Of a stretch of 64,000 nucleotides of DNA, positions 1,705 to 47,581 are shown in pieces. The translations under genes and the position numbers were made by a program. The stretch's first letter is position 1; every line of letters begins with the position of its first letter. The stretch is from Mytilus californianus (Eukaryota), in contig NW_026262690.1 of NCBI RefSeq assembly GCF_021869535.1, positions 94,922,001 through 94,986,000 of the forward strand, read 5' to 3'. The notes under the pieces are model-generated. The model was not told the origin of the DNA. It did no database searches and was given only the letters and a program-made list of their open reading frames with translations.

Positions 1705-2207
1705 AAAGAGCCATTTGGTCCCATCTGATCAAGAGCTATCCCGATAATTCCTCCAACTGTCGGAACTGCAAATATGTATGTTAAAAGTCTCCAGTCATTT
1801 TTCCCAAAATTAATCTGCTTGCGAAAAAAGATCAACATAAAGGCGTTGATGGCTACGATGTTGACCATTAAAGTTTGTGCTGTTATAAACACGGCAAGCA
1901 TGAACCCATAAAAGATACAGATACCTTTTGGATGCGGGTGATCCTTTGTAATAGCAATATGCATGTGATCCATCGTATGAGCAACGTTAAACAGACAGTC
2001 GCAAATCGCCATATAAACTACGAATCTTTCGCTTCTTGACCATGAGAAAAATGTTTTGTAGCTCTTTTTCTTGAATGATACTACTATTACACAAATAGCT
2101 GATATAAAGCTCAAAAATATACATGTTAATGCTGGGACATGTATAATATAGAACTGGCCATTGTCCAAACCGGCCAGATCCAAACTGTAACCATCTTTGC
2201 CGCCCAT
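1705..2207 (-). CDS. cAMP-receptor-like / GPR157-like 7TM receptor, paralog 1, exon 1 (TM1-TM4); exon 2 lies outside the window
   Basis: ATG at 2207 (MGGKDGYSLDLAGLDNGQFYIIHVPAL...ERFVVYMAICD...HTMDHMH...CIFYGF...GPNGS). Ends TT|GTAAGT, a canonical donor at 1704, at the same phase-2 position as in the other four paralogs. The TTG start in the ORF track is probably not used. Confidence 0.88.
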
Positions 2208-3255
2208 TGTGTATCTTATGAATGAAGAAATATAACTGTGCAACAGTATCTGGAACAATATGTAGGATATTATCTATGTCTCCATGCCGATATATATACA
2301 TATGAATATTTACCAATCAATGTAAACCTTCATACCAACGGAAGCCGTAGCCATAGCAAATTAAGTAAATTGAAGTAATCTTGGAACTGGTACACAAGTT
2401 CAGGAGTCTATTTACTAGTTCTAATTTTGATTAACAGCATTACGCGTGATTCTAAAATAGATTTTATTTGATGCTCTCGATGCAAATATTTGGAAGGCGG
2501 AATGCATACAGTATATAACTAGTCATAGGGAATGGGAGCCAAAACAGTAGAGTCAAAACCGTCTATAGAAGGATATGAACTTTATTTGTATCACATAAAA
2601 ATCTTAAAAATTCAAACTTTTAATTGAGGTATGAATATGTACTAAACCTATACCAAATAACTATCAGTTTAAAAGAAAAACAAAGTATATGGGGTATCCA
2701 TCCATGACACAAAATCAGTACATGCACAGTTTGCCAATGATGACTGTTTGACAATGATGTCATGCTACAAACGTAGTCGCCCTATTGCATAGTCCCTCTT
2801 GTATATAAAACTTCTTTCAAGAGTGATAAAATTAAGAATTATTTCAAACGCCTCTCGTTATTCTTATTTAGTAGAGTACAGATTATGTATTATGATTTTT
2901 CAGTGAATAACATTGCTGTGATTCCAGCTGATTTCGTTTTCTGTTTAGGGTTTGTAGTTTGTTGTTCTCTTTTGGTCGTGGTGCAGTCTTTCTTTCTTCG
3001 ACTCGTAGTTCTATCAAGATAACACTACTATTGGGAGTACGAGTACCGCTTACGAAGCCTTTTAAAACTTCCGGAGTACAAAATTGATAGGAATATGGTA
3101 TTTTCTGTTAGAGTTAATTATTGTTTACAGTTTCATTTTAAATGTTCTCTGCTTGTATTCATTCCCCTCTTCTTCTATTTTCCTGTCTGGTTTTTTGCTT
3201 GTGTATTGTCGTGTAAAGTAATTAATAATTTTCTTTCTTTAACTGCATTAGAAAG

Positions 3256-3366
3256 AAAAAAGTAAAATAACAAAAATACCAAACACCAAGGAAAATTCAA
3301 AACGGAAAGTCCTTTATCAAATGCAAATCAAAAGCTCAAACACATCAAACAAATAGAAAACAATAA
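3256..3366 (-). repeat. Dispersed repeat family C, 3'-end fragment
   Basis: AAAAAGTAAAATAACAAAAATACC(G/A)AAC.CCAAGGAAAATTCAAAACGGAAAGTC... matches the copies at 28022, 35262 (inverted) and 61483. Confidence 0.75.
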
Positions 3367-5419
3367 AGTGTACTTATTGAAAAAATATATATGCTCTATC
3401 CTTATATCATTAGGTTTGTCGTCTTCTATCTCTTATGTATCCTCTTTTCAATATGAATATAATGAGACAAAGAGTACACATCAATCCATGTACATCGTCT
3501 ACAAATGCCTACTTTAAAAATATTCAACTTGGGTACTTCCAATATTGAGGACGAACAATTTACCAAATAATTTGATTAAAGGCCAGTGACATTAACTGCT
3601 CTTTCAATTGCTTGGTAGCCATACTTTGGTTTCAGGCTAAAATGGCTGAATAATAATTGATTAGTTGCTACTGGGCAATACTGTTTCACTGTTTTCATGA
3701 CATAATTTTGCATTTCTTGCATTTTATTTGCTACTTTAGTATCTCCCCCTTTTTTAATGCGGTATTGACAATAACGTGCTTATTTTTTTCAGTTTCCTTT
3801 TTATAATACCTTTAAAAGAGAGGTGGGAGATACAAATGTACTAAAGAAATATTCAAAGTCATAAATCGAAAACGAACTGAAAATTAATGAATAATTCGGT
3901 AGGTCAAATTTGATTATTTATTATCATTTGCTTTCGTATATTCGTCCTGCTTATTTTCGGACCAGTCTTTTTATAACAAATTATTGTAATCCGCCAAAAA
4001 TAAAAAAAAGTTGCTCCCTAAAATGTTTATTTTGGTTTGAAATGTTTTATAAGATGCAACTGTAAATTCATTAACATGTTATTTTTTCACAAATGTGACC
4101 AAATTTGCTATAGTCTTACCAGCAAGTGTATTTTATCACAGTACAGGGAAATTTGGTATTATAACCGAATGATCATTTTATCAATCTCTGATAGTATTTT
4201 GATATTTATCCGTTTTCCAGTGTATTTTTTGCCGTACCGAATCGTTGTATCTAGCCATTCGAAAGGGGGTTCCAACCCCCCGGAACACCATGAAACGTTC
4301 ACATAATAAAAAAAAAAATAACAGAAAAACAAAAAATCGAAAAGGGGGGGTGGGGAGTCAACCCCTGGAATATCCCCTGGATCTGCCAATGGTATCGGTT
4401 AGAATAACATATAAGGATTATTTTTTGGGAAAAAATACGTGTACTATTGTCTGTGTTTTATGTACATGGAATTTTATTGACTTTGCACGGGGAGAAACTG
4501 GAAATAAAGTTAGTAATGAAGGAGGACCACACATTCGTTGCATACAAATTTTACAATCGCTTGCATGAGTTTAGGTAAAGTTATTTTGAACGATTATCAT
4601 AACTTTAATAGGATCGATACATTAGGGATAGAGCATATCTATACTATTAAATGATCACTATACAAATCCTTGCTCTGTATAATGTATATCAATCAGTGAC
4701 CGCCGTGGATAGTAAACTTTGAATTGATAGTAAATAGCAAATGCACTTTATTCATAGTATATGTATGATCATAGTATACAGAAAAACGCGAAAATAATTG
4801 AAATTAACAGAAAACAAAAAATTAACGGACTTTGGAAAAAAGGGGGAGGGCTAAAAAAAATTGATCTGTCCCCAAGTACCTGTGACTTTTGATGCCTTTC
4901 CTGAAATACTCCAGTCATAAAATCAGTTACAAAATTCATCCTACAACAAAAGGGGGGAGCAAGGGGTTTAACTGTTATGCTGTTATGGGGTAATTTAATT
5001 CTTTGTTATCTGTTATTCTGAAAATATATTTGCTGTTAGCTGTTATTGTCTTATTCATTGTTAGCTGTTATAGGACCATTATTTTTATTGTTATCTGTTA
5101 TTGTGAGATTGTATTTGCTGTTAACTGTTATTGAAAATTGGAATGTTAGCATTTTGACAGCCAATCTTAAGTAGAAATTGAAGATAATTGAACATTGTGA
5201 CTTAGATAGAGAGTTGTCTCATTGCCCGTGGCACTCATACCACATCTACTTATATCTATTGTGGGTCTTTCCACTGGTGATATGGAGGTCACGTATTTGC
5301 AGAAGATTCCAGTACATCACATAAACATATTAAAAACAGTCGGGTCCAGGACCATTCCAGTATACATTATTATTATTATTCTTTGTAATAAATTCCATTG
5401 TCAGTGAACATGTTTTTAG

Positions 5420-6905: not shown

Positions 6906-6929
6906 ATATATAAAAGGTGTTTCTGTTAA

Positions 6930-7198: not shown

Positions 7199-7388
7199 AG
7201 TTATATAATAAGATCTACTGTATTGGTCCTTGACCGGACTGATTTTAAGATTTCATTTACTGTTATCTGTTATTGTCCCTTTTGAATTCCTTGTTATGTG
7301 TTTTAAGCCAAATCAATTTACTGTTTTGCTGTTATTGGAACCCCCTTTGCCCCCCTCAACAAACATACTTTCAACAACGCTCTAAATG

Positions 7389-9450: not shown

Positions 9451-11439
9451 GCTGATGTTTCATTTATTATGTCTTGGCGGGTGGGCTGTCCATTGGATTT
9501 TATTTAAGATATCAGTGCTAAATTTATGTGAACGGCAAACATTATATATGAAAAGTAGTTTCTTGTGAATTTATGTAAAGAAATATAATGGATAAATTGC
9601 AAAATAAAGCGAGGTAAATTTGCAATCAACATTAAAAAAGTGACACTAACCTGTCAATGAAAAAATAGACTTGATATGTTTTGGGTAAGGAACGTTATTG
9701 GTTACCAATAACGTAAACCTGTACATATGGTTACAGTTACCAGTTAGTCAAACTACTGTACCATCTGAAGTAAAAAAAAAACAAAACTGTTTTCATCACT
9801 TGTTCAGACAAGACACAGGTTAACCAAGTTATCTAATTATATACTCACTAGAGATCTTTATCAAGAGATGGAATATAAGAACTATTTACCCATTTTTTAT
9901 AGTTTACTAGTAGAATATTTTCAACCTTTGCTCAACGTTTGACTCATGGAATAAAAGCATGACTTTACGTTCCCTAAAACGACAATAAATGGGGAATTAA
10001 ACTTTTTTTTAATAACCCAAAAGATTAAGAATTGTACTTATTAATTACAATTTGAATCAACATTTAAAGTATTACATGTAAACGTGACATAGCCGTCACG
10101 GTGTTGTTTTAATTAATATTTCAGCTTACAAAGTAAGCAGGACTAAAACTTTTTTTCTATATCTAATAGATTCTAGATCCGAACGGAATCTAACAAACTG
10201 ATGGCCCAGTTTTACTAAATCATACTATCAGAAAAGTTTATAAATTCAAATTTCAATCACACACAATATCCGTATGTGCTTTGTCTCAACTAGTTTGTGT
10301 TAAAATATAGGCTCATTTGAAAAGTCAAGAACGTGGGAAAAGTCAATAACCTAGATATATTTTTTTTATTTTAACACGATTGATGTATTTACAAAATTTG
10401 AAAAGTAAATGAATCAATCGAATAAACAAGTAAAAACAAACATCTAAGGCTTTATGCTACACTTCTCATATTGTAAGCGGAAGTGATTTTAGATTTGAGG
10501 TGGGATTAATAAAACATAAAACAAACAAAATACAAAAGCAACTACAAAATAACCACCACCCCCAAAAAAGAAATAAAATATAAAGACACAACAATGACAA
10601 ACAACAAAAAGCCAATAAAAGCCCCACCGACTTTCCGAAAAATTATTCCACCTATGCTGATTTATAGGGTCTTAAGCTTTTCAAGCATCTTTGTGAAAGA
10701 TTTGAATAAAATGTATGTGTGTGCGGTTTGTGTGTGCGTGGTGTCATGGTGGAGACGGTTGCCACCAATTCCTGTTATGCCGCCTATTGCATCATCTTTT
10801 CTTATTTTATATTATCATATAAGCTTCACTGTTGTTTATAAAATTGTCCGTTGGATTAAACTAGAGATTTTACGAGCACTGACCTTTTGGGTTTTGCCTT
10901 GTCTTTTTCGGGTATATAAACAATATACATATATTGCCGGGAAGATCTAAAATTCATTTGTACGACTTCAGAAACAAGAACAAGAAAAAAAAAGTATAGT
11001 AAAATGGTAGACAACAGTATACTATCTTTTTACATATATCATGTTGTACTGGTACTGAAAATGAATTCGAATATGGTTAATAAATCCAGTCTTCCAAGGA
11101 TCTTCCAAGAAAGTTTTGGTCATTAAAAAACACAAGATTTTATTTGATCGTTGTTCGCTCAACTGTCAGTGGTAAAAATATCATGCATATTCATGAGGGG
11201 CATGAAGAATAACAAGAAATTTGGTTTAGGTCAAAAACTTAATTTAAGAAAGGAAAGAATAATTTCTTGGTCAGGTAGGTTGAATATGATAAACTTGAAT
11301 AATGATGAATACGTGTTTAACGCCTAGTGACAAATATTGTATGCACACCTGGACGATATCTTGACTACATCGACGTATGTATCCGGATGTTCAACTCTTT
11401 TTCTTGTAGTGACGGTCCGCAAGAAGACATGTTATCCTA

Positions 11440-11620
11440 CCCGGACACATTATTCTGACTGCGAGCCGATTAGTCTTGTTATAACTTCTAAATGCCGTGT
11501 GTTTGGTAGAAATTCAGCAAACATCAATTTCAAATATTTGTTTTGACCTTGTTAGGTATCTTACCCACATCCTTTCACTCTCGAGGTTCTGACGCTTCCA
11601 CTAGATAACAGAGGCAGATC
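11440..11620 (-). mobile_element. Degenerate tRNA-derived SINE
   Basis: CCGGACACATTATTCTGACTGCGAGCCGATTAGTCTT...TTTTGACC...CACTCTCGAGG resembles the antisense body and head of mollusc tRNA-SINEs. A and B boxes are decayed. Confidence 0.4.
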
Positions 11621-12787
11621 CTTGGAGCTTGAAGAAATACAATTTAGTTTGTAATAAATGACAAACAAGTGCACTTCTGAATTGGTATGCTCGTTTATAA
11701 CCTTTAAAAATTTTAAAAGAATGTATACGATATATAAACATGGAATGATATGAATGTGTTATTATTCTTGCTTTGGATAGTATATTAGCTTTTTGAAATT
11801 CGGTATTTTTGAAGTGGAAAAAGAAGTCTTTGGATTTTTCAATGAACTGTTTTGAAAGAAAGAAATGTTTAACTGAATGAAAATCGAAATTGAAATATTC
11901 TGAAAATATTTGTCTGAAATATTATTCTGATATATTAGATTAATTGATGAGTATGTTTTAACAAATATTGAAAAATCAAAAGACCGCAATAAATCTTGAG
12001 AATCTAAAATAAAGAAGTTTCTCCTTCCTAACGCAGTTTTTTGAATGAAATAAACGAGGTGCTTATATATGAATTATCGGGTTTATATGTCCTTTGAGAA
12101 CATAAAAAAATTGGGACAAAATCATGAATGTAAAGCAAAAAAAAAATATGACAAAAATAAGGAGATGTGGTATGATTGCAAATGAGACAACTATCCACCA
12201 AAGTTCAAATGAAGTGGATGTAAGCAATTATAGGCAACCGTACGGCCTTCAACAATGAAAAAAACCCATACTGTGTGGTCGGACCCTGCATTTTGAAGGA
12301 GGCGAATGTTGGTTGTTAGTTTGGTCTGTTGTAATGTCAAATATTTTTTGTGTCAAAATAATAGAATATTACGTATTAAACTTTTTAATGACATCGCAAT
12401 AGATAATCCTATATTCCCAACTCTATCTGATACTGAAAAACTAGTATTCCCGCTAAATCCTTCATATATAAACCAAGTAAAAAAAAACAGGTTCCTTTAT
12501 AAAACAGTCATTAGAGCTGAGGACAGGGGACTCTTAGTTATTTTTGCTTGTATATATATATACGTATTCAAATCAGTTTGTTTTTTGTTGTTAGATAAAA
12601 TTATTTGTATTTATCACAAGTATCATGTTTTACTTATCTAACAATAAAGGATTATTATATATGTTACATGTAAACCTTATGTATTTTTCATTTAATAAAT
12701 CGTTTAAAAAAGTCCATGCTGTTGCTTTATTCAATGCGTAATGCAATGTATATTAACTCACCATAGATATCAGGCTTAAACCTTAGT

Positions 12788-14070: not shown

Positions 14071-15722
14071 TACTGAATTACAGGCTCTTAAAACTCGAGA
14101 ATGGCACATACAGAATATGACAGGGTTAAACAATGTTTGCGAGAACCGTTTAACCATTTCTTTATTCTAGTATTTTATTCTTTTTACCACTTCGTAAAAT
14201 CTAGCTTTCTAATGTGTTTCTTTCCTCCTTTTTAATATTTTAAAAATCAGTATGATGTGTTGTGTAAATTTATTAAAAGGTCAATAAGGAAAGCTCTTCT
14301 TAATATTTTTAGTTGAAGTAGATTGGATGGAAATAAACAACTTTATCGTTTTGGTATTTTTCTTTATCATTATCAAAATGAAACATATGATTAACAATCC
14401 AGAAAACTAGAAACATTTGGTATTTGAAAACATATAGTTTATTAAAGAGAGTTCTAATGTATAAGGGGAAACAATTCCACTGATTTCATGATCACCTATC
14501 GATGTATTATTTTCAGTGAATATATTAGTTTGTGTTAAGTGTAATGTTAGTTTTAAGATAAAAAAAAAAGGTCGGAATATGCCAAAGGGGCATTCAAAAC
14601 CAATAAGTCGAAAGGAAAACTGCTATAACTGGAATATATGACACAACCTTGATATTAAGAACATAAAATGCAGCGGCTAAATATTCAAATGCGCTCAGTT
14701 AAGGAGTTAAATGAATCAAAAGAACGCACACCTGGACATGTTTTAAAATGAAAGAATAGATGGCAATCGTATTGGTTAAACATGCCTTAAGAAAATCGTA
14801 TGGTCTGTGCAGCGTAAAATGGCTTTTTAGTGTTTTGCAGTTTATACAACTAAAATCACGGATACACTAAAATGATTACCCTTTTCTACGAATCACAACA
14901 TCCATGCTAAATTTGAACATGCAAATGTAAGAATAAGTAATTAATTGTAAAAAACATGACATCAAAACAATTAAGAACAGCCAATTATACTTTAAATAAT
15001 TGCGAGATGAAAGAGACAAGGTTTAAACTTATGATTCCTATTTTATTTACGTACGCGGCTTGTTTCTTTTTAACTAATTTAGAAAATTTTCAAACCGAAA
15101 TTTACAACGAAAATGTATCATTTAAATCATGCCATACCAAACAAATTGCCACTACGCGGTTGCTACCGCCTATTCTACCAGCATCGATACAAACCAGAGA
15201 AAATATTAACGAATAAGGGTGTACGATGTGATTTTTATTATCCATCAAGTTACGTTGAATACCGACATTCAGGGGATCCGAAATACATAGAAGCATTTTC
15301 AACATGATATATTTAAATTAATTCAGGTAAAAGTAAATAAACTGAAAGCTTAATACATTTTTAATATCTTTCTTTTTGTACAGACATTTGCACAATGTGT
15401 GGAACACTTAATGACGACAAGGGTTTCACTTTTCGGTTGTATCATCATTTTTTACTTTTTTGTTTACAGGAAATGAACCAAACAAAAACAAAAATGAAAA
15501 CGCATCTTTGTCCTTTCACACTTGAAGATGTCGTGACAATTTAACCACGTGACAATTTAACCACATATAGTGAATAACATTTATTGTTATTGTAAAAGCT
15601 GATAAAAAAAGATGTAAATTACTTATAGGATGTTCATATAGGGTTCCTTCCGCCGGATAATTGTCCTTTTTACGATGATACTATTCATTTGAAGTGTGAA
15701 AAAAATCAGTTAAGTAGAAAGA

Positions 15723-16285
15723 ATGTCCAACATGACAAGCTTTTTCGTTGAGAATTCTACAAGACCCTCTATTGGGGAAGTTAAAGCACCAGTTGATGGC
15801 TATGATATAGCCGTGTACGGAATAGCAGAGGGAACATTTTATAACATTCACGTGCCAGCGCTGATATGTATTTGCATAAGTTTTATATGCGCGTTGACAA
15901 TTATTGGATATTCTTTCTATCATCAACATTATTCAACTTTTTTCCAGTGGACAAAAAGCGAGAGATTTGTAGTATACATGGCACTGTGTGACGCTCTTTT
16001 TAACGTTGCACATTTTACTGACCATTTGCACATTGCTGTAACAAAAACATTACCAAGACCAAAATCGCTTTGTGCATTTTATGGATTCATGCTGACTGAG
16101 TTCATAACAGCACAAAATTTGATGGTGAATATTGTCGCCATTAATGTTTTTATATTAGTTTTCTACCGTAAGCATTTATATTTTGGAAAATGCGACTACC
16201 GACTGTTGGTCTACATATTTGGTGCTCCAGCACTAGGGGGACTCATTGCAGGTGCCTTTGGACAGCTTGGACCAAATGGATCATT
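15723..16285 (+). CDS. cAMP-receptor-like / GPR157-like 7TM receptor, paralog 2, exon 1
   Basis: ATG 15723, MSNMTSFF...DGYDIAVYGIAEGTFYNIHVPAL...HFTDHLH...GPNGS; ends TT|GTATGT (donor 16286). Confidence 0.92.
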
Positions 16286-16947
16286 GTATGTATTTTCTTA
16301 ATTTTACCGAATCAGTCACACGTATCTTTTTGCTGCGTCTGGATCGCTTTTATGAAGAAAAAATATCAATTTTTAAAAATTATTTGAAATTTTTTTTTAA
16401 TTTGAATGACGTTAGAGATTTATATTATTACACAATTTCATTCTTTAGAGATCTTCAGCAATATTAATGGAATACATAAACTTAAATACTTTCATATCCA
16501 ATGAAGAGAACATGTGAGACAGAAATCAGTTAATGGGTGTATGCGAAACAATAAAATGGTTGATTTATGTTCCTTGTGAACCGATAAAACGTTGCTTTTT
16601 TTGTTTTTTTGTTTTTTTAAACACAATTAAATCATCTTTATTGCACTAAATGCTGTTTAACAATTTACTTAGCTTACAGCATTGAGCTAAGTTTCCCTGT
16701 GTGTTAATAATTAGATATCCTAATACTAACATTTATATATATTTTATTAGATATTCTCCCTGGATATCTATGATTAACGTTGCTTTTTTGTGCTGCCACA
16801 ATTAACACCACTATATTAATTTATTGGTTGCCAAACACCAATCAGCAATGTTTCGGTTCGCATTTCGTACATGGACCTACAATCTTCAATGTTATGATTC
16901 CGTTTGTTTAAAATGTATAATAAAAAATATTCTCATTTTCTTTTTAG

Positions 16948-17434
16948 CTGTTATTTTGATGGAGTTAAGGGGAAATGGACGGGTGTTTTCTTCACAACAG
17001 TACCACTTTTGCTGGTTTTGGTCATAAACACGATTCTTTACATTTTAAGTTGGTTAAGGATCTACAAAGAAGCCAAAGAAATTAAAGATTCACTCGGAAA
17101 GTCCTCTAGAGTTTTAAGAGCTTCACATAAAGCTGCGAAAACAATGTCATTATTTGTCACAGCATTCTTTGTTCAATGGTGGGCAATGGCGTTATATGGC
17201 GTTTGGCAGTTGGTTGATGATGTTCCATTTCTTTTATTCAATTTTGTGACAACATTTTCCAACGTGGGTGGTATTTTGAATGGAATAGTTTTTATCATCA
17301 TAATGCGTAGAAAACGTGAGAAGGCAGAACCAAGTACTAAAGCCTCCGACGACAAAGTGGGATCTGGACATACCGCAACTACACCAATGCACTCAATCGT
17401 ACATTCAAACGGTCATTCTGCAAATGTTGTTTAA
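16948..17434 (+). CDS. Paralog 2, exon 2 (ECL2 Cys to C-tail); spliced product 349 aa, intact
   Basis: Acceptor TTTTCTTTTTAG|C TGT TAT (16947/16948). 563+487 nt = 350 codons including TAA. TM5-TM7 (HKAAKTMSLFVTAFFVQWW; SNVGGILNGIVF), basic RRKREK and a Ser/Thr/His-rich tail. Confidence 0.92.
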
Positions 17435-18805
17435 AGCAATAACGACACGGAACATATTTTATTTCTTTTTGATACCATTATTGAAATATACTGGAATTTG
17501 TTATTGCCATGTATAAATAAGAGAACTAATAATTCGTGAATTTTTGTTATAACTTTGATTGTGGGTGTGCGCATTTATTTGTGTCTGATATGAAAGATAG
17601 ATTACATTTTGAACATGTAACGACACCTTATATAACGGAGTAATTATATACTATGGTACATATATGCATTTAAGAGAACGACAATCATATTTTAACATTT
17701 CAAATGTCAAATGCACGAATTGATAATGATTGATTCAGTAAATACAATCGATTCAGTCTTCAACTAAAAATGTAATTTCTGCCTTTATTTCGGTTTAAAA
17801 GTAAGCCACATCTCCAGAAAGGGATGCAGGCGTTAAGACACCACAGAAACATTAATTGGCCAATCCGATAGATTAGTACTAAATAAAAACCATTTTAAAT
17901 ATGTAACACGCAACTCAACCTTGTGCAAAACGAAATTCAGTTAATAAAGTGCTCCGGGAGCGTACTTATGTCCCTTAAAGCATGTATCGTCAGTCAAATT
18001 GCCTCGTTGTAAATGCTGGTTATTGTCGTATTCGATTTTAGATCATAAATGAGGAAAGGTGAATGGAATAGTTGCTTAGGTGAATACAGATTTTCCTTCA
18101 AGGTCAAATTTATCGCGAGGGTCCATAAATGGAGGTGACTCAATTTTTACTATTAAGAACCATTGATTACTTAGCTTGTTTGTAAGCAGTTATTCTCTAC
18201 CAGAGAAATCCTTATAGGGAACACGAATTTTGTTGCACTTTATCAACTATGAGATTTATACTGCAATCGTTATATTTGAGCAGTCAAAATGCGTTGTATA
18301 AATTCATGTTATATACAGTCACTGAACTTATAAAGCACTAAACCACAATTACCGCTATCATTCGTATTGAAAGGTTACAGTACATACTTCCGCGAGGTGG
18401 TCACCGTTTCCTACAAAAAATGAGCCAAAAATGTTGTTCTTGTTCTTATTTGTAAATAAAATTGTATAAATTATTACGTTTTTTCCTTATGGTATATATT
18501 TTATTCTGTAATCAGGGACAATCATTATTCTGACTGGTTTGAACAAGATACATGTTGAGTTTGACTCCAGCAAAGTCAGAGGGAAAATTTTAAAAGTAGT
18601 TTTGAAAAAAAAAAAATTCCCAAAAAACAACTTAATTGGTGTAAAAAGGTATAACAAAAATATAAATTCAAAAAAAAAGGGAGAAAATCTGTAAAAACTC
18701 ACAATATCAAACGTTAGACTTTATCAACCAACGGGACGAATGGAAACAACCTTAGTACAGGCATTTTCCGAAGAAAATGGTGGCTTAAACTTGGTTTTAC
18801 AGCTA

Positions 18806-25333: not shown

Positions 25334-26753
25334 AGAGAGGGACGAAAGATACCAGAGGGACAGTCAAACTCATAGATCGAAAACAAAATGACAACGCCAT
25401 GGCCAAAAACAAAAAGACAAACAGACAAATAATAGTACAGATGACACAACATAGAAAACTAAAGACTAAGCAACACGAACCCCACGAAAAACTGGGGGTG
25501 ATCTCAGGTGCTCCGGAAGGGTAAGCAGATCCTGCTCCACATGTGGCACCCGTCGTGTTGCTTATGTTATTACAAATCCGGTAAATAGTCTAATTCGGTA
25601 GGTCACATTCGTGAAAAGGGAAGGGTTTGTAGTTACGACATGAGGAACATATCCGATATCATCTGTGAAACGGTTATTCCATAACGGTCAACGATGGCGT
25701 CCGTAAAATTTACGAAGGGATGATTTCAACTTCACCATTTGGAACTCTTGGTTTAATAGCATCCTTGTGAGCAGCAATCCTCTATCAAGGAAATCATGAT
25801 AGGAAATACAAGCCCGGGAATATCGTATCAATTGGGAGATATATACTCCGTATGCAGGCGCTGCTGGAATGTTGCTACATAGAAATGGAAAGTTCACAAT
25901 TGGGAAGCTGAAATCATCTCTTTTGTCGTAAAGTTTTGTTTTCAACCGACCCTCATTGTCAATTTCTAGATGTAAGTCAAGATATGAGGCAGACTTAACT
26001 GTATCGGTAGTATCCTTTATCTCTAGTTCGATGGGATAGATTCGTTCAACATAGTCACCAAATTTTGTATTATTTAGTGAGAGAAAATCATCTATATAGC
26101 GGAACGTAAAGTTAAAGGATATTGCTAACTTCTTAACTTTCTTCCTAAGAAGTTCCTGTATGAAGTCAGCCTCATAATAATAAAGAAACAAGGCGGCAAG
26201 AAGAGGGGCACAACTGGTTCCCATTGGAATTCCGACAGTCTGTTGAAAAACACGTCCTCCAAACGTAACAAATATGTTGTCAATCAAGAAATCAAGCATC
26301 TTGATAATGTCAGTTTCAGAGAATTTTTTGTTATAATCAGACTGATTCTTTACAAAGTAGGATTTATCCCTCCCCAAGACAAGATACTTGTATCTACGTT
26401 TGCCATTCTTTTTAATGAAACAAAGTAATACCAACTCTTTCAATTTGTCTTTTAGTTTGGAATGGGGAATACTTGTGTAAAGTGTAGAAAAGTCAAATGT
26501 TTTAATACTATTGCAAGATGAGAGAGTCTTAGATTGTATGTACTCTAAAAGATCTTTGGAATTTTTTAGTATCCACATCTGATTCACGCCACCTCTAGAA
26601 TAGGCAGTTTCACAATAACTTTGGAACTTTGGCTTTGATTGCTGATAAAATAGATGTTAATAATTTCGAAAGAGGTTTCTTGGAGCACTTGGAAGACCCA
26701 GCAATATACCGTTGTTTGTAAGGACACTTATGTAGTTTAGGTATCCAATACAG
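25334..26753 (-). mobile_element. 5'-truncated Penelope-like retroelement, family D, copy 1 (RT disrupted)
   Basis: ORF 25688-26587 with FDFSTLYT, GIPMGTSCAP, FRYIDD, YLDL and TKLYDKRDD motifs. An 8-nt deletion near the C-terminus and a +1 shift at about 26625 relative to copy 2 (58994-60891), to which it is otherwise nearly identical. Confidence 0.92.
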
Positions 26754-29256: not shown

Positions 29257-30673
29257 ATGAACGATCGTATTTTCTTGGTGATAGGCATAATTTTATACTT
29301 TTTAAATAAAAATAAAAATTTTATAATTTTAAACTTTTCATAGTTCACGTCCAAGTTATAGCATGCATATGTATAAGTTCCATATGTACAGTAGCAGTAA
29401 TTGGTTCTTTCTATCACCAAAGCTGTCCTACGTTCTTCCAATGGCCTAAAAGTTAAATATTTGTTGTGTACATGGCACTATGTGATGCTTTGTTTAGCAT
29501 TTCACTTATTTCTGATCACACACACATTGTTGTTACAAAAACATTTCCAAGGCCGAAATCTCTGTGTGCTTTTTACGGATTCATACTATATTATATATAT
29601 ATATATATATATATAGCAGAATTCGTACCAGCTCAAAATTTAATGGTCAATATTGTTGCGATAAATGTGCTTGTATTAATATATTTTCAAAAACAAATAG
29701 ACTTCGGTCGATGGGACTATCGACTTTTGGTATATATTTACCATGTTCCTGCAGTAGGAGCTACGATTGCAGCTACGCTAGGAAAATTTGGCCCGAGCGG
29801 AGCATTGTTAGTGTTGTTTTTTTATTTCAAAATAGTATTTCAAATGAGAACCACGCAATTTAACATTTGTTAGATATAATGGTAAACATTCCGTTATAAA
29901 TTATTTTCGATTTGCAAATTTTAATTATCAAAGAACGTAAGCCCTCATTAAAATAGAATACGTAAAAGTTATACAAAATTCAGTTTATTGAAAAATCTAG
30001 TCAATTCAGTATGAACGGCCCATGTGAGCTAAGGAGATAAAAATTTGACAAAGGAAATAATAATATCATTGCAATAAAGTTGTTATATACCATTGTAGAA
30101 AATCGACCAAATCATAAACATAAAGTGACATTAGTTCATTTAACTGTTTTCTTCGATTTTTAAAGTATTATTTACAATGTTTATTTTTCTTCTAGTTGTT
30201 ACATCGACACAGTAAAAGGGCAAATGACATATATTTTCTTCTTCAGAGTACCTTTACTACTCATTTTAGTGAGTAATACAATCATGTATGTAGTCAGTTT
30301 GTTTCGTATATATACAGAAACACATGAAATTAAAAGCTTGCTTGCAAAATCATCAAGAGCTATACGAGCATCACATAAAGCTGCAAAAACAATGTCTTTG
30401 TTTGTATCTGCTTTCTTTGTCCAATGATGAGCTCTTGCTGTTTATGGCGTATGGCAACTGATAGGAAGCGTACCAGCAACAATGGTTAATCTAGTCACAA
30501 TATTTTCAAACATTAGAGGTCTTCTAAATGGAATTGTGTTTATAAATATAATACGAAGGAAAAGAGAGAAATCAGAAGAGAAAGGATCAAGCGATAAAGC
30601 AGGGTCCGGTGCTTCGAACAGTTCACATATCAATTCTACAGCTCATTCGACACATACATCTAGTGCCGTTTGA
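29257..30673 (+). pseudogene. cAMP-receptor-like 7TM paralog 3, pseudogene (exon 1 about 29257-29806, exon 2 30196-30673)
   Basis: Decayed, frameshifted N-terminus; TAA at 29454-29456 (E of the ERF motif); 27-nt (TA)n insertion at 29589-29615; donor GTTAGT at 29807; acceptor CTAG|T TGT at 30195/30196; the conserved QWW is read CAA TGA TGA (30422-30430). Confidence 0.92.
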
Positions 30674-37885: not shown

Positions 37886-38436
37886 ATGACGAACAGTTCT
37901 TATAATGTGGTCAAATATGTAATTTCAACTTCAAAAGAACTAAATGATGGTTATGATTTACCTGTATATGGACTTGCTAATGGCACGTTTTACAACCTCC
38001 ACGTGCCAGCACTGGTTTGCATATTGTTAAGTTTAATTAGCGCTGTGTCGGTCATTAGTTACTCATTTTACCATCAGCGCATATCTACATTCTTTGAGTG
38101 GACAAGAAGTGAAAGATTCGCTGTTTACATGGCAATATGTGATGGCCTTTTTAACATTTCTCATTTTGCTGACCATCTGCATATTGTTCTTACGAAGAGT
38201 CTACCAACTCCAAAAGTTTTGTGTGCTTTCTATGGATATTTGTTGGCGGAATTCATAACAGCTCAGAACTTATTGGTCAGTAACGTTGCCATTAATGTTT
38301 TTGTATTGGTATATTTTCGGAAAAAGCTGAACTTTGGGTATAGAGATTACCGACTTCTTTGTATCATTTTTTTAGTTCCTGCATTAGTATTTACAGTGGT
38401 TGCTGCCTCAGGACAGCACGGTCCAAATGGAAGCTT
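37886..38436 (+). CDS. cAMP-receptor-like 7TM paralog 4, exon 1
   Basis: ATG 37886, MTNSSYNVV...DGYDLPVYGLANGTFYNLHVPAL...HFADHLH...GPNGS; ends TT|GTAAGT (donor 38437). Confidence 0.92.
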
Positions 38437-39429
38437 GTAAGTATAAATACAAAACCTTTGTAAACTTTTGACGAAGTGTCAGGGTAAAAGTATTCGAATA
38501 CTTCCAAGTCTAGCTTATTTAATAATTGTTGTTTGTTTGATTTCTAAAAGCAAATATTTCAAGCATATTCAGGGCGAGAACACATAAAACATAAACAATT
38601 TAATCGGTAAACTATGCAAATTAGATCGAACGAAATAACGATCATGTAATGTGAAATGTCACTAGAAAAAGAGGGTGTTTGATAGGGACAGAAATGATGC
38701 CTATCAAAAGTCAAGACCAGGACACCTACGGACATCACAAATAAATATTGGAGTAATTTTTAATGTCAACCGAACGTAGATACAGATTTGTACATCGAAG
38801 TCAGTCGGATGCAACCCTCATCCCAGTAAGTTTTTTTTTTGTTATACGACTTGAAGGATTTAGATAACCGTGTTTATATACCTTTGAGCCAAGTGTATTC
38901 TTATATTGAAAAACAAATTGTATGGTCTTACAAACTGTGTTGATGATGTTATCTAAGTATCGTAGTTCAAAATAGGGGTGGAAGATACCAAGGGAATATC
39001 CAAAAAGTCATAAGTCGATGAAAAACTGACAACGCCATGATAGAAAATTAAAATACGACGAATAAATGAACAAGTCTACAAACACTACGTAGAAAACTAA
39101 AAACAGAGTAACACCCAACCAAAACCGGGGATAAAATCAGGTTCTCTCGAAGAGTAGGCAGCTTCTGCTTCACATGTAATACCCATCGTGTCGTTTGTTA
39201 AAAGAATATTGATGTGAATTAAAACGATTTTTGTCTTTTTAGGCCAATTTAGATTGGTACCGTTAATGTTATGATTTATCATGACGTATTCAGATATGTC
39301 AGCATAACAACAACCGTAAACCATTTCAAAAGCGAAACATGCACCAACATTTTTTACTTTTTATCTTTTTAAAAGCTGACTTAAATAGTATACCGATGGT
39401 TATGTGTCAAAAACGCGTTTGTTGAATAC

Positions 39430-39870
39430 AAATAAGCGGAAAATACCAAGGGGACATTCAAAACTTATAAGCAAAAACATCCTGACAATATTATTTACAT
39501 GGCAGAAAACGGAAGACGACGAAAAGACAATAATACCACAAAACACTAAATAGAAAACTAGAGACAAAGCATAACGAAACCCATTAAGAACTTGATATGA
39601 TCTTATGTCCTCCGGTAAGGTGAGCAGATCCTGCAAAACAAGTGGCAACCACCATGATGCTCATGCTCACTACAGATTTGGAGATAAGTCTTATTCGGTG
39701 ATGTCTCAATCGAGAAAAAGAGAAAAGATTGTTGTTATAACAATTTTAACATATCTGTTATACTATTAATCTGTGACACAGATATTTGTTAACAGTCAAC
39801 CAACTCGTTATTGAGCTTGTAAAACTTACGAAAAAAAATTTGAGCAACTTTCATCAATTACGCTCAAGAC
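39430..39870 (-). mobile_element. Degenerate family D Penelope-like 3' end (tail + ORF end) in the paralog 4 intron
   Basis: ATACCAAGGGGACATTCAAAAC...GGTAAGGTGAGCAGATCCTGC...AGTCAACCAACTCGT...GTAAAACTTACGAA is collinear with about 59000-59400. A second shorter tail lies at about 38985-39200. Confidence 0.65.
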
Positions 39871-39928
39871 CAAATTAGAGAAGCAAATTTCACAAAACAT
39901 TTTTTGAGTAATTTAAACACAACAGGCC

Positions 39929-40895
39929 TAATGCAGGTTTCACACTGTCCCAAAATTGACACCAGATGGCCACACGAATATGGATATGGGTTTTGATTTT
40001 CGCGCAAAGATGGTCCGGAACTTATTCACAAGCCTATCATCAGCCGAAGCAAGTACGATACATACAGAAATTCACACGATGGCACCCGAACCACACAAGA
40101 AGGCAACACAAAGATGTGAATTTTTATTACGATATTTATACGCAGGACACACGAAGGCAAAACGATGACTAAACGATGCGTTCGACTTTGGTCACGAAGC
40201 CATCACGAGACCTCCCGATGGTATAAAACATTCGGCCGACGGTGGGAAACTTAACTCAGTAACCTAATTTTTTGGTCCTTTATCTTTACTTTACAAGTTA
40301 TTTGAATTTCTATATTAAAGTTGTTTTCAATCAAACTGAATTCTGAAGAATTGTGATTGAAGCTTTGAGAGTTACACGCTCCTCTGTTCTGTACAGCTAC
40401 TAACGACTGTCCGCGAAAGATGCTCTGAGACTGGCGTATTATATGTCCACGTTACCATGACACATGTGAAACACTTGAGCTTCTAAAATTGGGTTGTCTT
40501 CGTCGACACCGTGGTCTCATCTCGATGTCATCGTACTATAAAATGATGCTTACACGACGGCATTGCAAGGGCTTCGCGTAGTCATGTTGACTTCCTAAGA
40601 CAACACTTCTTGTTTCTTGTTTCTTGTTGACCTTACGAAGAGCAAAATGGACATACGAATTCAACACAAAAATGATCCTTCGTAAGGTCTTTTGGACATT
40701 TTTTGGCATGCCAAATATTTTGCCACCGCTCACGAAGTTGCTGCGGAAGCCTGAAAACTTAATCGGGGGTCTAACGATGGCCTAAGATGCTCTCAAGAAT
40801 GGTCCGATGTTTTTACGATCACACCCAATATTAGACATTTCCTTTACCGTGTGTCCATCTGGTGTCGATTACGGGACAGTGTGACGCCTGCATTA
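39929..40895. mobile_element. 967-bp non-autonomous DNA transposon with about 41-bp TIRs (PIF/Harbinger-like TCACACTG motif)
   Basis: Left TAATGCAGGTTTCACACTGTCCCAAAATTGACACCAGATGG; right end reverse complement TAATGCAGGCGTCACACTGTCCCGTAATCGACACCAGATGG. GC-richer interior. Superfamily uncertain (TA or TWA flanks). Confidence 0.8.
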
Positions 40896-41297
40896 TATAA
40901 CACCCACTACTTATCTATATTATCAATCTTTTGGGTTGTCTTTTAGGGATAAACCCAGGTTAAACTAAATAACTCTTTAAATGAGTAATGTTTTTGTAAT
41001 AGAAAATGTCCACACTATCGGTTATGCATTCCTGTGAAACAAAGCTGAAATAATCTGTGTAACTGTGATGCTTATGATATAATAATGAAAGAGATTGATA
41101 CATAAGTTATTTTTACGAACTTTGTTCCTTGACCTAGGTCTACTGTCTTCACTTTGTATCTGTTGTCATATTTGCCCAGTTTGTTTGATTGAAATTAAAG
41201 CAAATAGACGGTATTCCAATGTGTACTAATTGTGCACCACTGCTGACTTGTTTTTGTACTCATATATAGCAAGAATAATACTGAACCTTCTCAAAGA

Positions 41298-41330
<33 letters not shown>

Positions 41331-41362
41331 ATTTGCATTAGTTCTTAACTTCATTTTCATTT

Positions 41363-41480
41363 TATATTGATAATGTTCTGTCACTCAATTACACACAATA
41401 TAATGTGTGCTTGAATTTCATATATCCCGATGAACTTGAGATTAAGGATACTACCGATATTAGAAAGTTAACTTCATAAA
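41363..41480 (+). mobile_element. Tiny Penelope-like RT remnant in the paralog 4 intron
   Basis: Translates YIDNVLSLNY...IYPDELEIKDTTD, matching YIDDVLSLNN...IYPIELEIKDTTD of family D. Confidence 0.7.
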
Positions 41481-41791
41481 TTGCCTTTACATATCTCAGT
41501 TAATATGTTATAATAGTTTATGTTTACACTACGGACGTCAGTAAAAGGGGTGTGCGCCTTACAAGAAAAGCTTCACACTATAGAGTTATGAGGAGGAACG
41601 ACTGCAATAGACACATCATAAGTTTTACTGTCACCATCACAAATATATCGATCAATACGATGTATCGTGGGTTCAACTCACTAGCGACATTTTTTCGCGG
41701 TCTTTGATCTTTAAATAACAGTTGTCTGATTTGATTTTTACCAAGAGTGACATTTCTACCATTGAATAACTTTGACGTATTCCTATTTCAG

Positions 41792-42179
41792 CTGCTACTT
41801 TGATGGTGTAACTGGACAGATATCCAACATTATCTTTACAACAATATTACTTTGTTTCATTTTGATAAGCAATATAATTCTTTACGTCATGAGCTTGGTA
41901 CGTATCTATAAAGAAGCACAAGCAATCAAAAAGAGTCTTGGAAAATCTTACAAAGCTTTGGAAGCATCACACAGAGCTGCCAAAACCATGTCTTTATTCG
42001 TTGCGGCATTTCTTGTACAGTGGTGGGCCATGGCGATGTATGGTATTTGGCAGTGGATTACGGATGTCCCGCAACTTTTGTTTAATTTCGTAACAACATT
42101 TTCAAATGTTGGTGGTATACTTAATGGAATAGTATTTATTATTATTATGAGAAGGAAACGTGTTGAGCTGGGCACTTAA
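41792..42179 (+). CDS. Paralog 4, exon 2; spliced product 312 aa, ORF intact but C-tail short
   Basis: Acceptor TTCCTATTTCAG|C TGC TAC (41791/41792). 551+388 nt = 313 codons including TAA. Intron 3355 nt. Confidence 0.9.
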
Positions 42180-45569: not shown

Positions 45570-46120
45570 ATGAATACAAGTAGTCTTGGAGAGGAAACAA
45601 CCACTTATGAAAACAGAATACAGATGAAAGATGGTTATGATTTACCAGTGTACGGAATCGCCGAAGGTACCTTTTACAAACTTCATGTACCAGCAATGGC
45701 ATGCATTTGTATAAGTTTTATATGCGCAATGTCAGTTATTTTTTATTCATTCTATCATCAAAATTGCTCTAAATTTTTCGAATGGTCAAAAAGTGAAAGA
45801 TTTGTGGTTTACATGGCGCTCTGTGACGCTCTTTTTAATGTGTCGCATTTTAGTGACCATCTTCACATTGTTGTAACAAAATCGTTCCCAACACCGAAAG
45901 GACTATGCGCTTTCTATGGATTTATGCTTGCTGAGTTTATAACAGCTCAAAGTTTGATGGTCAATATCGTTGCTATCAATGTTTTTGTCTTAATTTACTT
46001 TCGAAAACATTTGTATTTTGGAAGATGGGATTATCGGCTGTTGGTTTATATTTTTGGCGTCCCTGCAGTCGGTGGCATCATCGCTGGAACGTTGGACCAG
46101 TTTGGTCCAAGTGGAGCGTT
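45570..46120 (+). CDS. cAMP-receptor-like 7TM paralog 5, exon 1 (open)
   Basis: ATG 45570, MNTSSLGEE...DGYDLPVYGIAEGTFYKLHVPAM...HFSDHLH...GPSGA; ends TT|GTAAAT (weaker donor at 46121). Confidence 0.88.
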
Positions 46121-47103
46121 GTAAATAGATAACATTATTAATTGATTAAACAGCTTTATTTAGATTGAATACTTGACAACATTGTTTAGAATTAAGCAGA
46201 TGATTATTATTTAAATACGGTTGACAACTTCCTAAAATTTACATACACATTTAGTATTCATGCCTATTTTCGGTTCTGGTTCCATTTTTCTGGACGCCTA
46301 CTCGTTACTCTTTAATCTAGAATACCCAAACATTAAATAAAAAAAAACAATTGAAAGAAAGCAGAAAGAAATCCATACTAGCAATGATTCAATTCAAGTT
46401 TGTAATTAAGCTGTCAATTGATTTATTTTATCATTATTTTTCCTACTTTATTGATGAGTTCAAATATAAAAAAATTCAATAAAGAAAATTAAATTTTCTA
46501 AAACATTTAGAAGTACAAAATTTAACTCTTGCCATTAAAAAAAATATACTTTGATAAAAAATAATTAATTACGATTTATGTCTTCCGTAAGTAGAAATCT
46601 CGATAAAAGTGTTCTTAATACTAAGAGACATTTAGCATTACTTCACATTTTACATAAAGCATAACATCATATGACCGTTTGTCAAATCCACGTTTTTAGC
46701 TGATCATAGCAGTTTTTTGTTTAGTAAATACCAAATGTCGACTAAATTGCTTACGCACACAAGTTTTAGGATGATTTACTTTTAAGTAAATCGTACTTAA
46801 TATTTCCATGCAAAAAGTAAAATAACACAAACTCCAAGGAAAATTCAAAAGTGATACATCCTGTATGTATAAAAGGCAGTTTGATTTTTTTTTTATGAAA
46901 TAACGTATTAATAAGTCCAATGATTTGCACACTGTCAGCAATAAACACCATCATCCCGCCATAAACTGGATATTACGATAGCTAGTTCTTACTGTTAATC
47001 GTAAGTTTTCGAAAATCAGATATACATAACATAGATATACATAAACGGAGATTTATCCGTTTTCATACTTGTGAAAATAAAAGCACAATTATTTATTTTT
47101 CAG

Positions 47104-47581
47104 CTGCATGTTTGATGCTATAAAAGGGAAAACTACATACATATTCTTCACAACTGTACCGTTACTTTTAATCTTAGTTATAGATATTGGTTTGTACACT
47201 TTAAGCTGGGGTCGAATTTATCGAGAGACGCATGAAATGGAGGATTCTCTCGGGAAATCCTCAAGAGCGTTACAAGCTTCGCACAAGGCTGCAAAGACTA
47301 TGTCTCTTTTTGTAACAGCTTTCTTTATACAATGGTGGGCTTTGGCTGTGTTTGGGGTATGCCAGTTGATCGGAAATACTGCCACTGTTACTTAGTTTTG
47401 TGACGACTTTCTCAAATATCGGAGGTTTGCTAAATGGAATTGTTTCATTTTTATTGTTAAAAGAAAAAGCGAGAAAGTGGGTACTAATGGTTCGCTCAAA
47501 TCAGGATCTGGAGGAACTGGAAGTACCCCGATCCATTCAATTAGTCATTCAACACAGGCGATAAAAAATAGTGAAGTCTGA
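47104..47581 (+). pseudogene. Paralog 5, exon 2: frameshifted (pseudogene allele or assembly error)
   Basis: Acceptor TTTTCAG|C TGC (47103/47104). Net -2 nt at about 47377-47390 gives TAG at 47393-47395. TM7 (FVTTFSNIGGLLNGIV) continues in the shifted frame; a -1 nt at about 47443 restores the original frame to TGA 47579-47581. Confidence 0.8.

What the first reader, a model, noticed from the sequence alone, without database searches (positions are those of the whole stretch)
1705..47581. Tandem birth-and-death cluster of five cAMP-receptor-like (class E / GPR157-type) 7TM receptors
Seen: five paralogs with identical two-exon architecture (1705-2207 minus; 15723-17434, 29257-30673, 37886-42179 and 45570-47581 plus), two intact, one partial in the window, two disabled. 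They lack the rhodopsin DRY and NPxxY motifs, and have TM2 ERF(V/A)VYMA.CD, TM3 C.FYG, TM6 H(K/R)AAKTMSLFV.AF..QWW and TM7 SN.GG.LNGIVF. Established: this pattern resembles the Dictyostelium CAR / GCR1 / Git3 / GPR157 group, which is usually low-copy in vertebrates, while tandem expansion with pseudogenisation is typical of chemosensory and immune receptor families. Inference: a lineage-specific bivalve chemosensory or environmental-sensing receptor array with unknown ligands; the best candidate here for an undescribed system.
Basis: partly seen in the sequence, partly recalled or inferred. Interest (0 to 1): 0.8.

Follow-up and report, generated by a model that had tools for sequence, protein, structure and literature searches.

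The report
Old tandem array of orphan receptors
This California-mussel window holds five neighbouring copies (two intact, one cut by the window edge, two dead) of an uncharacterised seven-helix receptor gene. The family is old and strongly conserved from hydrozoans to bivalves and barnacles, so it looks more like a set of sensors for one fixed signal than a fast-changing smell-receptor array.

Summary
Five paralogs lie at the stated places. All share one phase-2 GT..AG intron at the same codon, and all lack DRY and NPxxY. Copies 2 and 4 are intact and equal the Mytilus californianus RefSeq proteins LOC127698892 and LOC127737158. Copy 1 runs off the window. Copies 3 and 5 are pseudogenes. RNA reads show copy 2 spliced exactly as modelled.

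- Class: none of 79 family members hits Pfam Dicty_CAR. About half hit Git3 weakly, half hit 7tm_1 weakly, and 11 hit 7tm_2. Profile hits to solved structures are all class A and weak; the best is GPR84. The predicted fold ties with every GPCR class. Distant kin from unknown organisms do hit Dicty_CAR and 7tm_2 and carry the GPR157 ECL2 motif, so the class stays open.
- "Bivalve-specific, chemosensory": the family also occurs in hydrozoans, barnacles, annelids and a nemertean.
- Age and selection: the window paralogs are old (dS saturated, dN/dS about 0.1) and have one-to-one orthologs in M. galloprovincialis.
- Extracellular parts are as conserved as the helices.

I read this as an old, bivalve-expanded array of an undescribed orphan GPCR family with a fixed ligand.

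The parts
1705..2207 (-). Copy 1, exon 1 (Met to the split Phe codon); exon 2 lies beyond the window start
   Evidence: tblastn E 1.5e-67. The reading frame is open and the donor is TT|GTAAGT. It is 97% identical to M. galloprovincialis P0134.
15723..16285 (+). Copy 2, exon 1 (N-terminus to TM4/ECL2); LOC127698892
   Evidence: Open frame. Together with exon 2 it equals RefSeq protein P0115. RNA coverage is shown.
16286..16947 (+). Copy 2 intron (662 nt, GT..AG, phase 2)
   Evidence: The joint 16285->16948 is seen in 10 raw RNA reads at 8 starts. It is also seen in spliced contigs of three further runs.
16948..17434 (+). Copy 2, exon 2 coding part (ECL2 Cys to stop). The 3' UTR continues to at least about 17650.
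16011..16031 (+). Copy 2 codons for H97-x-x-D100-H101-x-H103 at the outer end of TM2
   Evidence: H97, D100 and H101 are at least 90% conserved in 79 members. The motif is invariant in the 13-sequence set and kept in distant kin.
29343..29806 (+). Copy 3, exon-1 remnant (pseudogene)
   Evidence: The start and N-terminus are lost. There is an in-frame stop in ERF and a 9-codon insertion in TM3.
30196..30673 (+). Copy 3, exon-2 remnant (pseudogene)
   Evidence: Two stops replace the WW of QWW.
37886..38436 (+). Copy 4, exon 1; LOC127737158
   Evidence: Open frame; equals P0138 with exon 2.
41792..42179 (+). Copy 4, exon 2, after a 3.35-kb intron. The stop falls early in the C-tail, with homology running on to 42239.
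45570..46120 (+). Copy 5, exon 1 (still open)
   Evidence: It is 90% identical to the intact M. galloprovincialis P0137. The donor is TT|GTAAAT.
47104..47581 (+). Copy 5, exon 2 with two frameshifts (near 47390 and near 47455): pseudogene
   Evidence: Three-frame translation.

Best explanation
The window carries an old tandem array of five paralogs of an uncharacterised seven-transmembrane receptor family, in Mytilus californianus.

Shown:
- Each gene has two coding exons split by a phase-2 intron in ECL2.
- Copy 2 is transcribed and spliced.
- Two copies are dead.
- The paralogs diverged long ago and stayed under purifying selection.
- The family is shared with hydrozoans, barnacles, annelids and a nemertean, and is multiplied in bivalves.

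Inferred:
- The protein is a G-protein-coupled receptor. It has a confident 7TM fold with a further helix directly after TM7 (helix-8-like) and an ECL2 hairpin. It keeps D2.50, Q3.39, W6.48 and N7.49, and has a class-A-like H-K-A-A-K-T base of TM6.
- It lacks R3.50, P6.50 and P7.50. It sits between rhodopsin-like, Git3 and cAR/GPR157-like receptors without fitting any of them.
- The outer face is as conserved as the membrane core. This covers the ordered G-Y-D-L-P-V-Y-G segment before TM1, the His/Asp cluster H-x-x-D-H-x-H at the top of TM2 with a His in TM1, and the G-P-N-G-x-F-C-Y-F-D-G-V hairpin.
- I therefore think each paralog senses the same or a very similar small invariant ligand (a proton, a metal ion or a small polar or lipid metabolite), not a varied set of odorants.
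- The paralogs probably differ in where and when they are expressed or in affinity, with occasional loss of a copy.
For: - Array and gene models.
- Expression and splice joint.
- Old paralogs under selection: dS is saturated or at least 1.5, dN is 0.16-0.37, and dN/dS is about 0.08-0.13.
- 1:1 orthologs in M. galloprovincialis at 97%, 88% and 90% identity for copies 1, 4 and 5.
- Wide distribution: Hydractinia, Clytia, Pollicipes, Amphibalanus, Owenia, Capitella and Tubulanus.
- The intron position is shared with Hydractinia.
- Bivalve monophyly is not rejected and is in fact preferred, so the expansion lies within bivalves.
- Conservation by region: N-terminal motif 0.76, ECL1 0.69 and ECL2 0.68, against TM 0.59-0.79 and ICL3/H8/tail 0.23-0.36.
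- AF2 model of copy 2: pLDDT 89, pTM 0.84.
- Class-level tests.
Against: - No ligand, G protein or tissue is known; function is inferred from conservation only.
- Conserved loops could also serve folding, a partner protein or a built-in agonist rather than an external ligand.
- Coordinates of the model were not available, so I could not show that the His and Asp residues face one pocket.
- Expression of copy 4 was not tested.
- The copy 5 frameshifts were not checked against DNA reads.
- Absence from gastropods, cephalopods, anthozoans and deuterostomes rests on incomplete hit lists.
Confidence: 0.55

Rival explanations
1. One reading: a lineage-specific bivalve chemosensory or environment-sensing array of class E / GPR157-type receptors, evolving by rapid birth and death to meet varied ligands.
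For: - Tandem layout with two pseudogenes.
- Many paralogs per bivalve genome, for example at least 11 in Saccostrea cucullata.
- Tandem class-A expansions with pseudogenes are the rule in bivalves (PMC11886862).
- The expansion seems to lie inside bivalves.
- There is partial motif agreement with GPR157.
Against: - The family predates bivalves.
- Paralogs are old, with dN/dS about 0.1.
- 1:1 orthologs exist between Mytilus species.
- Extracellular segments are among the best conserved parts.
- No Dicty_CAR hit in 79 members.
Confidence: 0.15
2. Classification rival: the family is a diverged branch of the ancient cAR/GPR157-like group, not a rhodopsin offshoot. The class A hits reflect only the shared GPCR core.
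For: - Distant kin P0273 and P0283 are homologous at profile E 1e-32 to 1e-35 and hhalign E 4e-41. P0283 hits 7tm_2, Dicty_CAR and 7tm_1 and P0273 hits 7tm_2, each above the Pfam cut-off.
- These kin carry the GPR157 ECL2 motif W-C-W-I.
- The TM7 motif G-G-x-L-N-x-[IV]-V-[FY] matches Q-G-x-x-N-x-I-x-F of GPR157 except for the Q (PMC12716839).
- 11 of 79 members hit 7tm_2.
- UniProt flags the Owenia members with the family-2 profile.
Against: - 0 of 79 core members hit Dicty_CAR.
- All significant solved-structure hits are class A; none of the 60 best listed is adhesion, secretin or Frizzled.
- The window copies have F-C-Y-F, not W-C-W-I.
- No bona fide GPR157 sequence could be compared.
Confidence: 0.3
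3. The patchy spread (bivalves, hydrozoans, barnacles at 50-58% identity, while annelid and nemertean members are only about 25-30% identical) reflects horizontal transfer among co-habiting sessile marine animals, not descent.
For: - Hydrozoan and barnacle proteins are as close to bivalve proteins as bivalve paralog groups are to each other.
- The Pollicipes gene P0161 is intronless.
Against: - Hydrozoa (Clytia plus Hydractinia) and Cirripedia are each one clade.
- A tree with bivalves as one clade is better than the free tree (p-AU 0.98).
- The genes sit on chromosome-scale contigs, in tandem, with the same intron position in Hydractinia.
- Long annelid and nemertean branches can be fast evolution.
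Confidence: 0.08

Closest known systems
Rhodopsin-like (class A) GPCRs, Pfam 7tm_1; nearest solved relative GPR84
   Same: - The 7TM fold, with a further helix directly after TM7 (helix-8-like) and an ECL2 beta-hairpin.
- D2.50, and C3.25 exactly 24 residues before the DRY position.
- An ECL2 Cys, W6.48, N7.49, and a K-A-A-K-T base of TM6.
- 39 of 79 members hit 7tm_1; copy 2 scores 30.7 bits against a cut-off of 30.5.
- The 60 best solved-structure profile hits listed are all class A (140 reach E <= 10). GPR84 has E 1.7e-6 and a shared C-x-F-D-x-x-x-G in ECL2; rhodopsin aligns over the full length at E 2e-4.
   Different: - No R3.50 (N-V/A-F replaces DRY).
- No N1.50 visible, no P6.50 (Q-W-W-A/T), no P7.50 (N-G-x-V-F/Y).
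- Scores are at or below the curated cut-off for half of the members.
- There is no orthology to any named class A receptor.
Git3/Gpr1 fungal glucose receptors, Pfam Git3 (PF11710)
   Same: 40 of 79 members match the Git3 model over TM1-5 (best E 2e-8). Several are above the 24.2-bit cut-off.
   Different: - Only one faint match to the C-terminal Git3 model GPR_Gpa2_C (E 0.27).
- ICL3 is short.
- The window copies themselves score below the cut-off on exon 1 alone (11.9-22.9 bits).
- The hosts are animals.
GPR157 and Dictyostelium cAMP receptors (class E, Pfam Dicty_CAR)
   Same: - No DRY or NPxxY, and short N- and C-termini.
- The TM2 and TM7 motifs partly fit the GPR157 signatures of PMC12716839.
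- Distant kin of the family hit Dicty_CAR and 7tm_2 and carry W-C-W-I in ECL2.
   Different: - 0 of 79 core members hit Dicty_CAR.
- ECL2 is F-C-Y-F, and TM7 starts G-G, not Q-G.
- The family is multi-copy and patchy, not a near-universal gene. The window's own array holds only five copies, though the family has many more copies across bivalve genomes.
- No direct comparison with a true GPR157 was possible.
Lineage-specific tandem expansions of class A GPCRs in bivalves (PMC11886862)
   Same: Tandem clusters with full-length, truncated and pseudogene members, and expansion within bivalves.
   Different: Those sets are defined by a lack of orthologs between taxa and by variable ligand pockets. 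This family is 50-58% identical between phyla, has 1:1 orthologs within Mytilus, and has conserved outer loops. It also has an intron.

Membership tests
Class E cAMP receptors (Dicty_CAR) | Match to Pfam PF05462 at or above its cut-off | tested here: not met
   No hit at E <= 1 in 10 full-length members. None at E <= 0.01 in 79 members. Only the distant relative P0283 hits it, at 35.5 bits.
GPR157 | TM2 motif L-L-x-x-L-S-[LVI]-x-D (PMC12716839) | tested here: inconclusive
   The family consensus is F-V-V-Y-L-A-I-C-D. L, [I] and D fit, and S is A. The class A TM2 pattern fits equally well.
GPR157 | ECL2 motif W-C-W-[IVL] | tested here: not met
   Window copies and core members have F-C-Y-F. Owenia has W-C-L-I, and the distant kin have W-C-W-I.
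GPR157 | TM7 motif Q-G-x-x-N-x-I-x-F | tested here: inconclusive
   Copies 2 and 4 have G-G-I-L-N-G-I-V-F. G, N, I and F are at the right spacing, and Q is replaced by G.
GPR157 | Significant sequence or profile similarity to bona fide GPR157 proteins | not testable with these tools
   No GPR157 sequence could be obtained by reference. The supplements of PMC12716839 are not held.
Git3 (fungal class III) | Match to Pfam PF11710 at or above 24.2 bits | tested here: inconclusive
   40 of 79 members match at E <= 0.01. In the 10-member sample, scores run from 13.9 to 31.1 bits. Exon 1 of the window copies scores 11.9-22.9 bits.
Git3 (fungal class III) | C-terminal module GPR_Gpa2_C (PF11970) on TM6-7 | tested here: not met
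   Absent from all scans except one faint hit at E 0.27 in P0215.
Rhodopsin-like class A | Significant match to Pfam 7tm_1 | tested here: inconclusive
   Copy 2 protein P0115 scores 30.7 bits against a cut-off of 30.5. 39 of 79 members match at E <= 0.01, best 4e-11.
Rhodopsin-like class A | E/DRY in TM3, CWxP in TM6, NPxxY in TM7 | tested here: not met
   The corresponding motifs are N-V/A-F, Q-W-W-A/T and N-G-x-V-F/Y. Only W6.48 and N7.49 are kept.
Rhodopsin-like class A | Asp in TM2, a TM3-ECL2 disulfide pair, helix 8 | tested here: met
   D90, C117 and C189 are invariant in 79 members. The model shows an ECL2 hairpin and a helix spanning 295-314, which covers the end of TM7 and continues beyond it.
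Chemosensory lineage-specific expansion (sense of PMC11886862) | No orthologs between taxa; variable ligand-facing parts | tested here: not met
   1:1 orthologs at 88-97% identity in M. galloprovincialis. 50-58% identity to hydrozoan and barnacle proteins. The outer loops are as conserved as the helices. dN/dS is about 0.1.
Chemosensory lineage-specific expansion (sense of PMC11886862) | Tandem clustering with pseudogenes | tested here: met
   Five copies lie within 46 kb, and two are disabled.

The most novel reading that the evidence does not exclude
This is a so far unnamed, ancient animal GPCR family outside the GRAFS classes. Its invariant extracellular His/Asp cluster (TM1 His, H-x-x-D-H-x-H at the top of TM2, ECL2 Asp) would make it a proton or metal-ion sensor kept by sessile marine invertebrates. 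The bivalve paralogs would be tuned to different ranges or tissues.
Probability: 0.12. Interest if true: 0.75.

Novelty: new variant of a known kind. Interest (0 to 1): 0.45.

Why it matters
Bivalve genomes hold hundreds of orphan receptors, and most tandem arrays are assumed to be chemoreceptors. This family is a counter-example. It is multiplied, yet its outward-facing parts are frozen from hydrozoans to mussels, which points to one fixed ligand. It also sits in the poorly mapped zone between rhodopsin-like, Git3 and cAR/GPR157-like receptors. Placing it would therefore help the classification of early animal GPCRs. The conserved His/Asp cluster gives a direct handle for mutagenesis and for pH or metal assays.

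Tried and rejected
- Exon-wise Pfam scans gave only sub-threshold Git3 and 7tm_1 hits, and exon 1 alone found nothing in the PDB.
I used RefSeq proteins P0115 and P0138, returned by the search, which equal the spliced models.
- The first AF2 model from 13 sequences was mediocre (pLDDT 70), and its Foldseek list was generic class A.
- The better model gave Z scores tied across Frizzled/Smoothened, GPR155, class A and adhesion receptors. Fold therefore does not assign a class.
- A word search with the distant W-C-W kin found only five unnamed proteins. Their contigs are short metatranscriptome pieces of unknown organisms.
- Searches for the gene names and for Git3 or GPR157 in bivalves found no paper on this family.
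- Horizontal transfer was considered and is not supported by topology.
- Pfam gave only weak reverse-transcriptase hits for two transposon ORFs and nothing for four other ORFs.

Full report
**What is in the window**

Nothing similar lies elsewhere in the window.

Every copy ends exon 1 with TT followed by a GT donor at the same codon. Every exon 2 starts after a (C/T)AG acceptor with the third base of that Phe codon. So one phase-2 intron in ECL2 is shared by all copies.

The state of each copy:
- Copy 2 (349 aa) and copy 4 (312 aa) are open. They equal the RefSeq proteins LOC127698892 and LOC127737158 of Mytilus californianus, on a 126.9-Mb contig.
- Copy 4 has a 3.35-kb intron and a stop about 25 codons earlier in the tail than its relatives.
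- Copy 1 has an open exon 1, and its exon 2 lies off the window.
- Copy 3 is dead. It has no start, a stop in E-R-F, a TA-rich 9-codon insertion in TM3, and two stops in Q-W-W.
- Copy 5 has two frameshifts in exon 2.

Full-length work used P0115 and P0138 as returned by the database search.

**Expression**

I laid one raw stranded RNA run and contigs of three other runs on 14800-18300. Coverage falls on both exons and a 3' UTR and not on the intron. The joint 16285->16948 (GT..AG, 662 nt skipped) appears in 10 raw reads at 8 starts and in three spliced contigs. Copy 2 is therefore a transcribed, spliced gene.

**Which receptor class**

Pfam results:
- Exon-wise scans gave only sub-threshold Git3 (N half) and 7tm_1 (C half) hits.
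- Across 79 full-length members, 40 hit Git3, 39 hit 7tm_1, 11 hit 7tm_2 and none hit Dicty_CAR.
- Copy 2 scores 30.7 bits on 7tm_1 against a cut-off of 30.5.

Solved structures and fold:
- A 79-sequence profile against all solved structures gave 140 hits at E <= 10, and the 60 best listed are all class A. GPR84 is best at E 1.7e-6 with a shared C-x-F-D-x-x-x-G in ECL2. Bovine rhodopsin aligns end to end at E 2e-4. No adhesion, secretin, Frizzled or Ste2 chain is among those 60.
- The AF2 model of copy 2 is confident (pLDDT 89, pTM 0.84). It shows seven helices, an ECL2 beta-hairpin, a helix spanning the end of TM7 and continuing beyond it, and an ordered N-terminal segment at residues 21-38.
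- Its structural neighbours are tied across classes: Smoothened/Frizzled Z 24-23, GPR155 22.9, GPR84 22.5, prostanoid receptors about 22, adhesion about 20.5. Fold does not decide the class.

Hallmark residues:
- Counting from C3.25, the DRY position holds N-V/A-F.
- TM6 has Q-W-W-A/T and TM7 has N-G-x-V-F/Y.
- D2.50, Q3.39, W6.48 and N7.49 are kept.

On the other side:
- The full-library profile search found distant kin from unknown organisms (P0273, P0283, P0322) at E 1e-27 to 1e-35. hhalign gives probability 100 and E 4e-41.
- These keep the TM1 His, the H-x-x-D-H motif and the G-G-x-L-N motif, but have W-C-W-I in ECL2. P0283 scores above the cut-offs on 7tm_2, Dicty_CAR and 7tm_1 alike, and P0273 on 7tm_2 alone.
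- W-C-W-[IVL], together with L-L-x-x-L-S-x-x-D and Q-G-x-x-N-x-I-x-F, is how PMC12716839 characterises GPR157. The window proteins fit these only in part.

I conclude that the family is an orphan lying between rhodopsin-like, Git3 and cAR/GPR157-like receptors. "Class E" is not shown, and "plain class A" is not shown either. A true GPR157 and the unclassified family GPRch3 of the same paper could not be compared, because I had no sequences by reference.

**Distribution and age**

Named members come from all major bivalve orders, often with many copies per genome. They also come from Hydractinia symbiolongicarpus (at least 4, in tandem), Clytia hemisphaerica, the barnacles Pollicipes and Amphibalanus, the annelids Owenia and Capitella, and the nemertean Tubulanus. 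The full-library search counts 882 cluster representatives at E <= 1e-3 and 127 at E <= 1e-30, many of them single exons from short contigs.

Hydractinia genes have the intron at the same codon, whereas Pollicipes P0161 is intronless.

Trees:
- Copies 2, 4 and 5 form a Mytilus clade, with copy 1 beside it.
- Copy 1 pairs with M. galloprovincialis P0134 (97%), copy 4 with P0130 (88%), and copy 5 with the intact P0137 (90%).
- Hydrozoa and Cirripedia are each one clade. Annelid and nemertean genes are long-branched and basal. The backbone among bivalve groups is unresolved.
- Forcing all 73 bivalve rows into one clade gives a better likelihood than the free quick search (p-AU 0.98).

So an older animal family was expanded inside bivalves, and topology gives no support for horizontal transfer. 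I left five rows out of the second tree and the AU test: P0183 (a fusion), P0192, P0215 and P0316 (extreme branches), and P0042 (an odd gene model).

**Selection**

Between window paralogs, synonymous sites are saturated (dS at least 1.5 or not computable), while dN is 0.16-0.37. That gives dN/dS of about 0.08-0.13 where it is defined.

By region over 74 members, the fraction of the commonest residue is:
- 0.76 for the N-terminal G-Y-D-L-P-V-Y-G-L-x-N-G-x-F-Y motif
- 0.69 for the top of TM2 and ECL1
- 0.68 for ECL2
- 0.59-0.79 for the helices
- 0.23-0.36 for ICL3, helix 8 and the tail

This is the reverse of what diversifying chemoreceptors show. It argues for a fixed ligand or a fixed extracellular interaction.

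**Mechanism**

Shown: a spliced, expressed 7TM gene in an old tandem array, with two losses.

Inferred: signalling through G proteins, from the GPCR fold, the further helix after TM7, the class-A-like TM6 base and the polar core. Also inferred is recognition of a small invariant ligand in a pocket roofed by the N-terminal segment and the ECL2 hairpin and lined by H43, H97, D100, H101, H103 and D192 (copy 2 numbering). Candidate ligands are protons, metal ions, or a small polar or lipid metabolite, the last on the weak GPR84 lead. I could not check the geometry, because model coordinates are not returned.

**Novelty**

The genes are annotated only as "uncharacterized protein" or "family 1 profile domain". 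I found no paper on them. Tandem GPCR arrays with pseudogenes are ordinary in bivalves (PMC11886862). The unusual points are the cross-phylum conservation, the frozen outer face with its His/Asp cluster, and the unresolved class.

Noticed in passing
window 47999-48041 (+): A full-length match to the type I hammerhead ribozyme (Rfam RF00163) scores 32.6 bits, just under the 34-bit cut-off, with E 3.9e-6. It lies about 420 nt downstream of the copy 5 remnant. Nothing in the whole window reaches any Rfam gathering score.
   Followed up: partly
window 25688-26587 (-) and 59295-60680 (-), with 60592-60948 (-): Two related ORFs of 299 and 461 aa give weak reverse-transcriptase (RVT_1) hits of 25.5 bits, below the cut-off. 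They look like copies of one retroelement, one lying between copies 2 and 3 of the array.
   Followed up: partly
window 51941-53251 (-): A 436-aa ORF ending in an acidic run has no Pfam hit at E <= 0.01. It was not examined further.
   Followed up: no
L001 (Hydractinia symbiolongicarpus CM055241.1) 2837-4079, 10001-11665, 17189-18076: Three receptor genes lie in tandem within 21 kb. The first two are family members with the same intron position as in the mussel. The third (295 aa, intronless, 7tm_1) did not match the family queries in tblastn.
   Followed up: partly
L002 (Pollicipes pollicipes) 10001-11032: The barnacle family member P0161 is encoded without an intron, unlike the bivalve and hydrozoan genes.
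   Followed up: no
protein P0183 (Mytilus californianus LOC127706548, another chromosome): The RefSeq model fuses an N-terminal UDP-glucuronosyl-transferase-like part (Pfam PF00201) to a diverged member of this receptor family lacking TM1. It is probably a merged gene model.
   Followed up: no
window 38437-41791: The intron of copy 4 is 3.35 kb, against 0.39-0.98 kb in copies 2, 3 and 5. Its content was not examined.
   Followed up: no
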